NCBI RefSeq assembly: GCF_040938485.1
Contig: NW_027271023.1
Coordinates: 372,001-436,000, forward strand
Direction: 5' to 3'
Length of the DNA stretch: 64,000 bases
From: Diadema antillarum
Lineage: Eukaryota
The notes beneath the pieces were generated by a model. The model was not told the origin of the DNA. It worked only from the letters and a program-made list of their open reading frames with translations, and made no database searches. How positions within the stretch are numbered: position 1 is the stretch's first letter; each line of letters begins with the position of its first letter. Position numbers and translations under genes: made by a program. Shown here piece after piece: positions 29,401 to 32,400 of the stretch.

Positions 29401-32400
29401 CAATGAGTGAAAAATTAGACTCACCACATATATGGCATATTCAGTAAATGTGATTTCAGACATTTCAAGAAAAGTTTAGAGTGCCAGGTACTTCTGTGTT
29501 ATTGAACATGCAAGTCATCATGTCTTGTAAGACTACATGTACATGCATTGTAGCCAGTGCAGGAGTAGAGAAAAGCTGCTAAGGTAAAATAAACAGCATA
29601 TTCAGAAGACTGAGCATGTGTTATACCAGCATGACCCTATGCATGTCTTTGGTTGGAGAATGACAATGGATTCATTAAAACAATTTGGCATTCTTAAAGC
29701 CATACGCATGAACTTGATCAACATGTGCCACACTGCAAACATACTGACTGACTTGAAGTACAGGCAAACCTTTGTGATGATGTTTGTAGATACCAAATGA
29801 AAGCTTGATGGATCTACACCAGCTTTTAAATGTGTCTTCCCACGGCCTCAATGCTATAGACTAACGATCATGGTGAGCAGCTATGACTGTTCCTGATGTA
29901 CGCAATAAAAGTACCAGTATTGTATATTTAGAAACCAACTGGTATGTTTGTCACACAGGATAAATAGTAGGGTAAATCAGGCACGTGTAAACAATCTACA
30001 ATCTAGGGTTGTTGCTGGTGACTAGAGTCAAGAATGAACCCCCCCCCCCCCACAAAAAAAAAGAAAAAAAGATTGCAGCATGTTACAACCATGATCCCTT
30101 GATCTCCAACCATTTGTGTGAGTTGTCCTTCATCTGCTCCTCTTCTTGTTTTTTACCCGATCTCAGCCCAAGTTTCTCAGCAAGGAGGAGCGAGCCAAGC
30201 TTGCCCTGCAGCGGAGACAGGAGGCAGTGGATGCCCAGAGGGCAGCGACGGAGGAGGCCAGGAAGAAGCAGAACGACTTTGAGAAGATCGCTCAGCAGTC
30301 AATGGGTGAGAGGAGTATCCTGAGTATCACCCAAACCCAAAGAGTGTTGAATTAGGATTTAATTGCTTCTTATTAGAGGCTTTAAGAAAATGCAGATCAA
30401 TTTTGGAAAAAAAAATGCTCAACAGTCAATTTGTTTAAAGAGAAATATATGAAGTATCAGCCTAGCCCTAGAGTGTTGAATACGGTTTGAATCGTTTCTT
30501 CTTTGAGGCTATTAAGAATACAACAACTGTACAATGACTGACAAGATTGCTCAATAGTCAACATGTAGGAGAAGTAACAGAAGCATGACTGTAATCCATG
30601 TTTTGAATTAAGTTTCAATTGCTTGTATAGTTTTTAAAAGATTGCTTAACAGTCAAGAGGTAAGAGCAGTATTTAAAGTATCACCGTAGCCCATAGAGTG
30701 TTGAAAAAAGTTTCAATTGCTTCTTCCTAAAGGCTGATTTAAAGAAGCAGAATGTCTTTGTTAAGATGGTTCAACAGTCAAGAGGTAAGAAAAGAGAGAG
30801 AAAAAAAAACACCACACGCAAAACAAACAACAGCATCACCCTATTCCATACATGTAGGGTTGAAGTCAGTTTGTAACCCCCTATTGACCATCGACCTATG
30901 CCCACAATGTGGGCCAGTGTGTTCATGTTTGCCATCCGTGTAGTTTCTGTGCAGATTTATTCGTTTAAGAAGCACTTTCAGGCAATTAGATATCTGTATG
31001 TGCGGTTGTGAGATGGTTTGGATATTTGTATTAAAAAAAAAAGAGTAAAATGTATTGCTTTCATTAACACTGTCAATGCATGTATGCGTACTGATGACTC
31101 AGATATTAAAAAAGTTTAAAGATTTTGTTTCCTTCATTCCATCCTCTTCATAAGAAGACAAGAGCTGGATGGGCGTTGTGGCGTGCGCCTGTAATCCAGC
31201 TACTTTGGAGGCAAGGGCAGGGATATGGCTTAGTCGGTAGCGCATCTACCTTCACATCCAAGAGTACCGGGTTCAATTCCGGAGTCTCACTGAGCAATGT
31301 TGTGTGTAGACATTCCATCCCCTCTAGTAAGAGGCATAACACTCTGTCCCTCAGATTGGACATTAAATGGAGGTCCCATGTGTGTGTTCACCATGACACA
31401 CGCATATAAAAGATCCCACTTCATTCATTCATCTCAAAGAGCAATGTGCCAACCTGGTGAAGTGGTCCCCCTACCCACCCATACAAAAAAAAAAACAGGT
31501 AAATGATGCTGACCCCTCATGGTTCGTCCCAGGTGACTAGCATTAATCGGCAAATGGTATTGACCAGGCACACTGTGCCATACGCTTGAATGAATGAATG
31601 AATGAATGAAAGACAAGAGCTCGGTAATGTTATGATCATTTGCACAGTCTCACTCAGCCTTCAATCTGTAAATTTGTCTGTAACAGAGGATCCACGAGAG
31701 AAGGAACGAAGAGAGCGGAGAGAGAGAAGGATGAGGGATGACAACATGGAGGAGGAGAAGCTGTCTAGGGATGAAGTGAAGGAAAAACAGGCCATCAAGG
31801 TAGGAATAAATCCGCCATCACATCTAATCAAGTCTGATCAAATCGTCTGTTCCAAAAATGTAGCAAGGCCCCTGATTATGATACAGAGCGCGATGGGAAA
31901 TTGCGTCAGTGAATGAGGAAAAACAAATTTCCCTTGGGAATTTCCTTCTCCATATTTCAGATATTAGTGAGCGACAGTGAGTGAAGTCAAAAGGTCCTTG
32001 AGGAGAAATTACCCTACCTTAAGGGCTTTGACATAAAGTGGGTGGAGCAGGATCTTCCACATTATTTTCTATTATTTGTGTACAAATTCACTTTGATTTT
32101 ATCTAGAGAGAGGTACTTACCAGGGCTGTGCAGCAATCTCATGGTAAACCCTCATGTTGTGCAGATGGGTGAATAGACGATATATTCTTTCAAATCCATA
32201 TTCGTGGGTTCTTGAATTTGCACTGCACAATTTTCAACTCATTCAAAATGTGCAGAGAAAATTGTACAGATATTTTTGCAGGTTTTAAGATTCAAACTAG
32301 CCAAAAGTAGTGCGAAATACATGAAAATTGATGTACTGCTCAAATTTCTGCATTAACAGTATTTCATTGTTCTGAAGGATGCATACATTGTAGAGCTCAG

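What the first reader, a model, noticed from the sequence alone, without database searches (positions are those of the whole stretch)
31167..31609. 7SL-tRNA chimeric SINE with a Nin/Deu-like core in an invertebrate genome
Seen: a 443-bp insertion between perfect 12-bp TSDs (AAGACAAGAGCT). It begins with ~55 nt that align almost gap-free to the 5' Alu domain of 7SL RNA (GGGCGTTGTGGCGTGCGCCTGTAATCCAGCTACTTTGGAGGC versus human GGGCGCGGTGGCGCGTGCCTGTAGTCCCAGCTACTCGGGAGGC). It switches at a GGAT..GCTT.AG microhomology into a tRNA-derived A box/B box, then a core resembling the AmnSINE1/DeuSINE (Nin) domain, and ends in (TGAA)n. Established: such tails typify CR1/L2-mobilised SINEs. As far as I recall, 7SL-headed SINEs are known only from Euarchontoglires (Alu/B1) and hagfish, and described sea-urchin DeuSINEs are tRNA-headed. 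Inference: this is either an independently evolved Alu-like SINE family in this lineage, possibly recruiting SRP9/14 through the Alu domain, or a one-off template-switch chimera of 7SL RNA and a tRNA-Deu SINE.
Basis: partly seen in the sequence, partly recalled or inferred. Interest (0 to 1): 0.85.

Follow-up and report, generated by a model that had tools for sequence, protein, structure and literature searches.

The report
Sea-urchin SINE with a 7SL head
A 443-bp retroposed element in an intron of the DDX23 gene of the sea urchin Diadema antillarum starts with the first ~52 bases of signal-recognition-particle (7SL) RNA joined to a tRNA-type SINE. If it proves to be a multi-copy family, it would be the first 7SL-headed SINE reported outside vertebrates.

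Summary
Window 31167-31609 is one insertion between perfect 12-bp target-site duplications.

- **Head:** the first ~52 nt match the 5' end of metazoan 7SL RNA from model position 1 (Rfam Metazoa_SRP, 33.5-37.4 bits, E about 5e-8, below the gathering score of 70). The U-turn and both loops of the SRP9/14-binding domain are present.
- **Promoter module:** a tRNA-type Pol III promoter follows. An A box, 32 nt and a B box match the pattern exactly; 0 matches are expected by chance. No tRNA model recognises this stretch.
- **Body and tail:** about 300 nt of body ends in a short hairpin and (TGAA)n.

The window is Diadema antillarum GCA_040938485.1, contig JBFRCO010000135.1. The element lies in sense in a DDX23/PRP28 intron, 65 nt upstream of an exon.

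Not settled: whether this is a family or a single chimera. I found no second copy in about 200 kb of Diadema DNA. The scan noted three similar elements on other pieces of this genome. The assembly keeps both haplotypes, so those notes could be images of the same insertion.

Papers to 2026 report 7SL-derived SINEs only in supraprimates, a shrew mole and hagfish. The Deu/Nin core and an L2 partner could not be tested.

Verdict: a real composite retroposon, a new variant of a known kind, with amplification unproven.

The parts
31155..31166 (+). 5' target-site duplication AAGACAAGAGCT
   Evidence: Perfect 12-nt direct repeat with 31610-31621 (family D6).
31167..31218 (+). 7SL RNA-derived head. It covers the Alu 5' domain (helices 2-4, U-turn CCUGUAAU, loops UGGC and AGCUAC), preceded by one extra G. 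The similarity may run on to 31222, overlapping the start of the tRNA-like unit in a GGG microhomology.
   Evidence: Rfam Metazoa_SRP model positions 1-54 align to 31168-31222: 33.5 bits, E 5.6e-8; 37.4 bits, E 4e-8. The Alu-derived mir-1268 model also hits the stretch (27 bits).
31219..31290 (+). tRNA-like Pol III promoter module, with A box TGGCTTAGTCGG at 31226-31237 and B box GGTTCAATTCC at 31270-31280. The cloverleaf is decayed and the T-stem has a 1-nt slip.
   Evidence: The A box + 32 nt + B box pattern matches exactly once in the window, against 0.00 expected in 100 shuffles. There is no tRNA call by ARAGORN or Rfam. The T-arm hairpin appears in the folds.
31291..31484 (+). SINE body. 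It includes the stretch 31354-31419 (GATTGGACATTAAATGGAGGTCCC ...
   Evidence: Read directly from the sequence. It has no relatives in the window or fetched loci. The core assignment is untested.
31485..31495 (+). Internal run of 11 A, a possible seam between the body and the LINE-derived 3' unit
   Evidence: Read directly from the sequence. Reading it as a seam is inference.
31496..31586 (+). 3' unit with the hairpin GGCAC-ACU-GUGCC (31567-31579), which ends 7 nt before the tail
   Evidence: The hairpin is present in the MFE and centroid folds. The fold energy is no better than shuffles (z -0.29).
31587..31609 (+). (TGAA)5 plus TGA microsatellite tail
   Evidence: families D2, D7.
31610..31621 (+). 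3' target-site duplication AAGACAAGAGCT
   Evidence: family D6.
31687..31799 (+). Neighbouring exon of the host gene DDX23/PRP28. Its acceptor AG is at 31685-31686, 65 nt downstream of the 3' TSD, and its donor GT is at 31800.
   Evidence: An open frame with splice signals is visible. The exons at 35742-35960 and 39456-39752 match human DDX23 residues 341-412 and 597-689 (E 1e-28 and 2e-41). The D. setosum DDX23 gene aligns to window 26.2-29.8 kb.

Best explanation
The element is a retrocopy of a chimeric Pol III-type RNA, inserted in one event by target-primed reverse transcription. The RNA carried nucleotides 1 to about 52 of 7SL RNA, which form the 5' pseudoknot domain that binds SRP9/14. 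These were joined, at a GGG microhomology, to the exact predicted 5' end of a complete tRNA-promoter SINE. That SINE has a hairpin and a (TGAA)n tail of the kind read by stringent L2/CR1-type LINEs.

The chimera most likely arose when a LINE reverse transcriptase reached the 5' end of the SINE RNA, switched to 7SL RNA and ran to its 5' end. This is the route proposed for the 5S-plus-tRNA heads of AmnSINE1 and SINE3.

I judge it slightly more likely than not that the chimera then became the source of a small family. In that case transcription would start at the 7SL end, using the 7SL A-box-like GGCGTTGTGG together with the downstream tRNA B box, or the upstream promoter of a master locus.

Shown: single-event insertion, the 7SL origin of the head, the promoter boxes, the tail, and the position in the host gene. 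Inferred: template switching, the LINE partner, amplification, and any role of SRP9/14.
For: One perfect TSD pair encloses the head and the body together. The head aligns to Metazoa_SRP from model position 1, at E about 5e-8, and every highly conserved consensus position is kept except C2. The tRNA-type A/B-box unit is exact, with none expected by chance, and places tRNA position +1 at 31219, within 3 nt of where the 7SL similarity ends. The tail repeat and hairpin are present. There is a precedent for adding a small-RNA head upstream of a tRNA head by template switching (PMC4824008, PMC4758252, both citing Nishihara 2006). Hagfish SINE1-1_EBu arose as a 7SL and tRNA-SINE chimera (PMC7245038). 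The first ~50 nt of Alu/7SL RNA form the pseudoknot domain on which SRP9/14 binding depends (PMC12265939). For a family: three other first-reader notes in this genome describe the same architecture on other contigs. These are unchecked.
Against: No second copy, with or without the head, exists in the 64-kb window or in six other Diadema loci of about 150 kb. The assembly retains both haplotypes and has a near-identical inverted duplicate of part of this window. The other notes could therefore be the same insertion, and 443 minus the 28-nt tail gives exactly 415. The canonical tRNA A box would start Pol III about 48 nt inside the element and drop the 7SL head. The element has no T4 terminator; the first lies 456 nt downstream. 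The 3' strand of the Alu domain is not demonstrably present, adding only about 4 bits (versus 59). All known successful 7SL SINEs keep that strand (PMC7245038; bioRxiv 10.1101/2024.08.25.609555).
Confidence: 0.55

Rival explanations
1. This is a one-off chimeric retrocopy. During the insertion of an ordinary tRNA-type SINE into the DDX23 intron, the LINE reverse transcriptase jumped from the end of the SINE RNA to a 7SL RNA molecule and copied its first ~52 nt. No lineage descends from it. The other notes in the genome are haplotig or duplicate images of this locus, or independent accidents of the same kind, like U6-L1 chimeras.
For: Only one copy is verifiable. The junction lies exactly at the predicted 5' end of the SINE RNA and the head reaches the exact 5' end of 7SL, as a template switch predicts. 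The assembly is uncollapsed, with 84% duplicated BUSCOs. This region is present at least three times in the assembly. The lengths of the notes are compatible with the same element without its tail.
Against: No head-less parent SINE was seen in about 200 kb of Diadema DNA either, so the absence of copies says little. SINEs are sparse in Diadema: 0.23% of the genome and 7,829 copies of all families in D. setosum. No note anywhere in the genome mentions DDX23. The head differs from the metazoan consensus at a highly conserved position (C2 to A, weakening helix 2). That hints at time spent as a non-functional sequence, but the species' own 7SL was not available for comparison.
Confidence: 0.38
2. 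The element comes from a master locus made at the DNA level. A full-length tRNA-type SINE inserted into a 7SL gene or pseudogene at about nt 52. Read-through from the 7SL promoter then yields chimeric RNAs that the LINE copies. This would give a small family whose daughter copies are poor sources.
For: It would explain transcription starting at 7SL nt 1 despite an internal tRNA promoter further downstream, and a low copy number.
Against: It requires the reverse transcriptase to prime at an internal (TGAA)n, or the transcript to end there. No such locus was seen. It is less parsimonious than a template switch. It is nested within the family hypothesis rather than exclusive of it.
Confidence: 0.05
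3. The 7SL resemblance is chance, contamination or an assembly artefact.
For: The score is below Rfam's gathering threshold.
Against: The E-value of about 5e-8 scales to about 1e-5 for this one family over a 1-Gb genome. The match starts at model position 1, exactly at the element's 5' end, next to a perfect TSD. The head is 7SL-like (AGCUAC) rather than Alu-like. The contig is a HiFi assembly and is identical in two fetched loci over the part that overlaps.
Confidence: 0.02

Closest known systems
SINE1-1_EBu (hagfish 7SL-derived SINE; Kojima 2020, PMC7245038)
   Same: Both have a 7SL-derived 5' end, were born as a chimera of 7SL sequence with an older tRNA-derived SINE, are mobilised by a non-L1 LINE, end in a microsatellite tail rather than poly(A), and have TSDs of 12-17 bp.
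   Different: The hagfish element keeps 96 nt of the 5' part plus about 44 nt of the 3' part of 7SL, a full Alu domain. It has lost the tRNA head and uses an RTE partner with an (AAC)n tail, and 2,363 copies are documented. The Diadema element keeps only about 52 nt of 7SL, retains a complete tRNA-type A/B-box unit behind it and ends in (TGAA)n. Only one copy is verified.
AmnSINE1 / SINE3-1 type '5S-Deu-L2' SINEs (Nishihara 2006, as cited in PMC4824008 and PMC4758252)
   Same: Both have a second small-RNA head added upstream of a tRNA-derived head, followed by a conserved body and an L2-type tail. A template switch from SINE RNA to the small RNA is the proposed origin.
   Different: The added head is 5S rRNA rather than 7SL. 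In those families the tRNA part is partly lost and the 5S promoter has taken over. Here the tRNA boxes are intact, and it is unknown which promoter is used.
Alu/B1, the tree-shrew Tu types, GarnAlu, and Urop of the shrew mole (bioRxiv 10.1101/2024.08.25.609555)
   Same: All have a 7SL-derived 5' pseudoknot domain with the UGUAAU U-turn. Some (Tu, GarnAlu, B4-like) are 7SL-tRNA composites.
   Different: All are mammalian, L1-mobilised and poly(A)-tailed. They keep both strands of the Alu domain after a central deletion of about 183 nt. Their composites are fusions of whole SINE monomers, not a 52-nt cap on a tRNA SINE.
Sea-urchin SINE2 families (SINE2-3_SP, a DeuSINE; SINE2-6_SP, L2-type tail; PMC4824008)
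   Same: They have an echinoid host and a tRNA-type head. They are the likely relatives of the body and tail.
   Different: They are described as tRNA-headed only.
Template-switch chimeric retrogenes (U6-L1 type; Buzdin et al. 2003, as cited in PMC4824008)
   Same: A small Pol III RNA with an intact 5' end is joined to the 5' side of a retroposed sequence within one TSD pair.
   Different: Those are individual accidents with variable junctions, made by mammalian L1. Whether the Diadema element is such an accident or a lineage is the open question.

Membership tests
SINE1 (7SL RNA-derived SINEs) | The 5' end derives from 7SL RNA | tested here: met
   Metazoa_SRP model positions 1-54 align to 31168-31222 at 33.5 bits, E 5.6e-8, and 37.4 bits, E 4e-8.
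SINE1 (7SL RNA-derived SINEs) | Complete Alu domain: the 5' part plus the 3' strand of helix 5, after deletion of the S domain | tested here: inconclusive
   The model pairs 31212-31230 with 31307-31325 (13 of 17 pairs), but this adds only about 4 bits over the head alone (versus 59). The MFE fold does not use this pairing. The species' own 7SL was not available.
SINE1 (7SL RNA-derived SINEs) | 7SL-type internal promoter (box A at 6-15, box B at about 76-86) | tested here: not met
   A box-A-like GGCGTTGTGG is present, with 2 differences from the human GGCGCGGTGG quoted in PMC7245038. The 7SL box-B region is absent and is replaced by a tRNA-type A/B unit.
SINE (any class) | Multiple dispersed copies with independent TSDs | not testable with these tools
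   No DNA search of eukaryotic genomes was available. There are 0 further copies in the window plus six Diadema loci. Three unchecked notes exist elsewhere in the genome, but the assembly is uncollapsed.
SINE2 (tRNA-derived SINEs) | A and B boxes at tRNA spacing | tested here: met
   TRGCNNAGTNGG + 32 nt + GGTTCRANTCC matches 31226-31280 with 0 mismatches, against 0.00 expected.
SINE2 (tRNA-derived SINEs) | Recognisable tRNA similarity or cloverleaf | tested here: not met
   ARAGORN finds none. Rfam gives no tRNA match at E up to 10, even on the 98-nt stretch alone. Only the T-arm and a partial acceptor pairing remain.
DeuSINE / Nin-DC superfamily | Central domain alignable to the Deu domain (about 120-nt Nin part) | not testable with these tools
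   No reference sequences are held: supplements are absent, and motif searches of papers and contig collections gave nothing relevant. My recollection of a GA.GG..TTAAATG.AG motif in Deu elements is only a lead.
L2/CR1-mobilised (stringent-type) SINE | 3' end shared with a resident LINE | tested here: inconclusive
   The hairpin plus (TGAA)n is present. The other (TGAA)n sites, at window 54.4-54.7 kb and L002 21.1 kb, share only the microsatellite. No LINE was available for comparison.
Retroposed insertion by target-primed reverse transcription | Target-site duplication flanking the whole element | tested here: met
   The 12/12 direct repeat lies immediately outside both ends.

The most novel reading that the evidence does not exclude
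Diadema antillarum harbours an independently evolved, amplifying SINE lineage with a 7SL-derived head. It would be the first in any invertebrate and the fourth known origin overall. Only the ~50-nt SRP9/14-binding pseudoknot domain is kept, as a cap on a tRNA-promoter SINE moved by an L2/CR1-type LINE. If so, the 5' domain alone, without the helix-5 clamp, is enough to be selected for in a SINE that does not depend on L1. This would give a natural test of the idea that docking to SRP9/14 and the ribosome promotes trans-mobilisation.
Probability: 0.42. Interest if true: 0.75.

Novelty: new variant of a known kind. Interest (0 to 1): 0.55.

Why it matters
7SL-derived SINEs include the most successful mobile elements of primates and rodents, yet independent origins are extremely rare. 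Three are on record, all in vertebrates (PMC7245038; bioRxiv 10.1101/2024.08.25.609555).

Each known origin keeps the folded Alu domain, and this has been used to argue that SRP9/14 binding is needed for efficient retrotransposition. An echinoderm lineage that keeps only the 5' pseudoknot domain, sits on a tRNA promoter and uses a stringent LINE partner would widen the phylogenetic range. It would also separate the contribution of the 5' domain from that of the full Alu fold.

If the element is only a single chimera, it still documents LINE template switching onto 7SL RNA in a sea urchin. That is the raw material from which such families arise.

The insertion also lies 65 nt upstream of an exon of the essential splicing helicase DDX23, where it could affect splicing.

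Tried and rejected
1. **Fishing for other copies through proteins.** The open frame across head, tRNA part and core (31167-31406) gave no hit in the word-indexed search. The full HMMER scan gave only two unrelated tandem-repeat proteins.

2. **DNA pattern scans.** The junction pattern found nothing in IMG/VR or in JGI metagenomes. The core pattern found nothing in metagenomes and one AT-rich chance match in IMG/VR, L007.

3. **Sampling the genome through neighbouring genes.** I fetched six loci from D. antillarum and D. setosum. BLAST and nhmmer found no copy of any part of the element except the microsatellite.

4. **Empty-site test in D. setosum.** The locus reached through the HNMT neighbour stops at window position 29803, 1.4 kb short of the insertion. 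The DDX23 protein id could not be obtained. My exon queries are too short for the length window of the search, and a spliced sequence has no reference.

5. **Internal duplication of the body.** The 16-nt repeat at 147-nt spacing is not significant: score 22 against a shuffle maximum of 27.

6. **A 3' Alu-domain strand after the tRNA unit.** Support is marginal (versus 59).

7. **Thermodynamic support for any fold.** All z-scores are near 0.

8. **CpG content as an age marker.** Uninformative.

9. **Literature.** I found no invertebrate 7SL SINE and no SINE description in the Diadema genome papers.

I did not read the letters of the window's N runs from the identical loci.
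Full report
**What is there**

Window 31167-31609 (443 nt) is bounded on both sides by AAGACAAGAGCT, at 31155-31166 and 31610-31621. This is a perfect 12-nt direct repeat lying directly against both ends of the element. That is the signature of a single insertion by target-primed reverse transcription.

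The element has no other copy in the 64-kb window. Only its (TGAA)n tail matches other microsatellites.

**The head**

A permissive Rfam scan of 31100-31700 gives Metazoa_SRP at 37.4 bits, E 4e-8. A scan of the head alone (31160-31222) gives 33.5 bits, E 5.6e-8, aligning model positions 1-54 to 31168-31222.

- The match starts at model position 1, one base inside the element.
- It keeps every highly conserved consensus position except C2. These include the loop UGGC, the U-turn CCUGUAAU and the loop AGCUAC.
- Helix 3 can form 6 pairs and helix 4 can form 3. Helix 2 is weakened by an A-G mismatch.
- The score is below the family's gathering threshold of 70, which is why the default whole-window scan was blank. 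That is expected for 52 nt of a 299-position model.
- Scaled to one family over a 1-Gb genome, the E-value is still about 1e-5, and the match sits exactly at the end of a TSD-flanked element. I therefore treat the 7SL origin as established.
- The first ~50 nt of 7SL and Alu RNAs are the pseudoknot domain on which SRP9/14 association depends (PMC12265939).

The model also pairs 31212-31230 with 31307-31325 as helix 5, with 13 of 17 pairs. This adds only about 4 bits, and the minimum-energy fold does not use it. A 3' Alu-domain strand is therefore not shown.

**The promoter module**

Behind the head lie TGGCTTAGTCGG (31226-31237) and GGTTCAATTCC (31270-31280). The pattern A box + 32 nt + B box matches exactly once in the window, with none expected in 100 shuffles.

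The spacing of 44 nt start to start is that of tRNA positions 8 and 52. This puts tRNA position +1 at 31219, within three bases of where the 7SL similarity ends, in a shared GGG. A T-arm hairpin remains.

ARAGORN and the Rfam tRNA model find nothing, even on the 98-nt stretch alone. The module is best called a tRNA-type promoter unit; descent from a particular tRNA cannot be shown.

**Body and tail**

- An A11 run at 31485-31495 precedes a 3' unit that ends in the hairpin GGCAC-ACU-GUGCC and (TGAA)5 plus TGA.
- None of the folds is more stable than shuffled controls.
- A suspected internal duplication is not significant.
- There is no run of four T inside the element; the first lies at 32065.

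I could not test the Deu/Nin assignment or an L2 partner. No reference sequences are held in the papers' supplements. Motif searches of papers and of contig collections gave nothing relevant. The other (TGAA)n sites in reach share only the repeat.

The literature does say that Nin-DC is part of the Deu domain, that sea urchins have a DeuSINE (SINE2-3_SP), and that they have an L2-tailed SINE (SINE2-6_SP) (PMC4758252, PMC4824008).

**Where it is**

An exon of a histamine N-methyltransferase-like gene in the window led to Diadema proteins. From those I fetched genomic loci.

- The window is 100% identical to D. antillarum GCA_040938485.1, contig JBFRCO010000135.1, at about 372,001-436,000.
- A near-identical inverted duplicate of the first 13 kb lies near 895-908 kb of the same contig.
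- A copy 96-98% identical lies on contig JBFRCO010001203.1.
- D. setosum is 84-89% identical.
- The published description of this assembly states that it retains both haplotypes: 1.75 Gb against about 0.7-1.0 Gb haploid, with 84% duplicated BUSCOs (PMC13511894).

The element lies in sense orientation in an intron of DDX23/PRP28.

- Exons at 35.7 and 39.5 kb match human DDX23 residues 341-412 and 597-689.
- The D. setosum DDX23 gene aligns to window 26.2-29.8 kb.
- The 3' TSD ends 65 nt upstream of the acceptor of exon 31687-31799.

**Family or accident**

This is the point I could not settle. The tools offer no DNA search of eukaryotic genomes.

- Searches through translated frames found no second copy.
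- Pattern scans of IMG/VR and JGI metagenomes found none.
- BLAST and nhmmer over six fetched Diadema loci found none, with or without the head.

That absence weighs little. SINEs of all families make up only 0.23% of the D. setosum genome, about one copy per 113 kb.

The scan's own notes list three further elements described as 7SL + tRNA + Deu on other pieces of this genome, of 415, 411 and 168 nt. They are unchecked. Because the assembly is uncollapsed, they could be images of the same insertion: 443 nt minus the 28-nt tail is 415. No note in the genome mentions DDX23, which mildly favours different loci.

The empty-site test in D. setosum failed for want of 1.4 kb.

**Mechanism**

Shown:
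- The chimera was inserted as one unit.
- The 7SL part reaches the true 5' end of 7SL RNA.
- The junction lies at the predicted 5' end of the tRNA-type SINE RNA.

These three facts are what a template switch predicts: the LINE reverse transcriptase moves from the end of the SINE RNA onto 7SL RNA. This is the route proposed for the 5S + tRNA heads of AmnSINE1-type SINEs (PMC4824008, PMC4758252) and for the birth of hagfish SINE1-1_EBu (PMC7245038).

Inferred:
- The chimera then amplified.
- Transcription starts at the 7SL end rather than at the tRNA A box, which would drop the head.
- The head recruits SRP9/14.

I put about 0.55 on a small family, about 0.38 on a single or recurrent accident, and the rest on a DNA-level master locus or an artefact.

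**Comparison and novelty**

Papers up to 2026 state that 7SL-derived SINEs arose only in supraprimates, the shrew mole and hagfish (PMC7245038; bioRxiv 10.1101/2024.08.25.609555; PMC10886601). I found no report from any invertebrate and no SINE analysis in the Diadema genome papers. Repbase and Dfam could not be consulted.

The element fails two SINE1 criteria as they are met by known families. It has no 7SL box B, and it has no demonstrable 3' Alu strand. It fits best as a 7SL-capped tRNA SINE, analogous to the 5S-capped Deu SINEs. I class it as a new variant of a known kind, with its status as a family still to be shown.

Noticed in passing
window 1-13067; L005 and L006 (JBFRCO010000135.1 at about 895-920 kb and 360-385 kb): The first 13 kb of the window occurs twice on the same contig in inverted orientation, at 99.94-100% identity. 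This is either a very recent inverted segmental duplication or an assembly artefact of the uncollapsed hifiasm assembly. If the duplication extends 18 kb further, a twin of the SINE should lie near 877 kb.
   Followed up: partly
window 20001-24153 versus L004 (JBFRCO010001203.1): The haplotig-like contig is 96-98% identical up to window 24153. It then carries at least 5.4 kb (L004 1-5443) with no counterpart in window 24.2-34 kb. This is a structural difference between haplotypes just upstream of DDX23.
   Followed up: no
window about 1-20500, minus strand: There is a tandem cluster of at least three histamine N-methyltransferase-like genes (Pfam Methyltransf_23; NCBI names HNMT-like). Five or more paralogues lie on the alternative contig, and the cluster is conserved in D. 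setosum.
   Followed up: partly
window 31622-31686: The SINE ends only 65 nt upstream of the acceptor of a DDX23 exon, in sense orientation, just outside the usual branch-point zone. An effect on splicing of this essential helicase gene is conceivable.
   Followed up: no
window 21323-21560 versus L003 7660-8176: A segment present once in D. antillarum is a three-copy tandem repeat with a period of about 184 bp in D. setosum.
   Followed up: no
window 54400-54720, minus strand: Two copies of a unit of about 200 nt, each ending ...AAATGTATGAATGAATGAATTTCA.GCAAGT..AAATTTCCAGAGG.AGAAAAAT.GAGAGAAT.ACTGAGG, lie about 200 nt apart. This is a local duplication whose (TGAA)n is unrelated to the SINE tail.
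   Followed up: no
L001 19564-20244 (D. setosum), minus strand: A 226-aa open frame (…GHTQMECDAMHSCIERNKRG…) is not called as a gene. It looks like a fragment of a transposon-derived protein.
   Followed up: no
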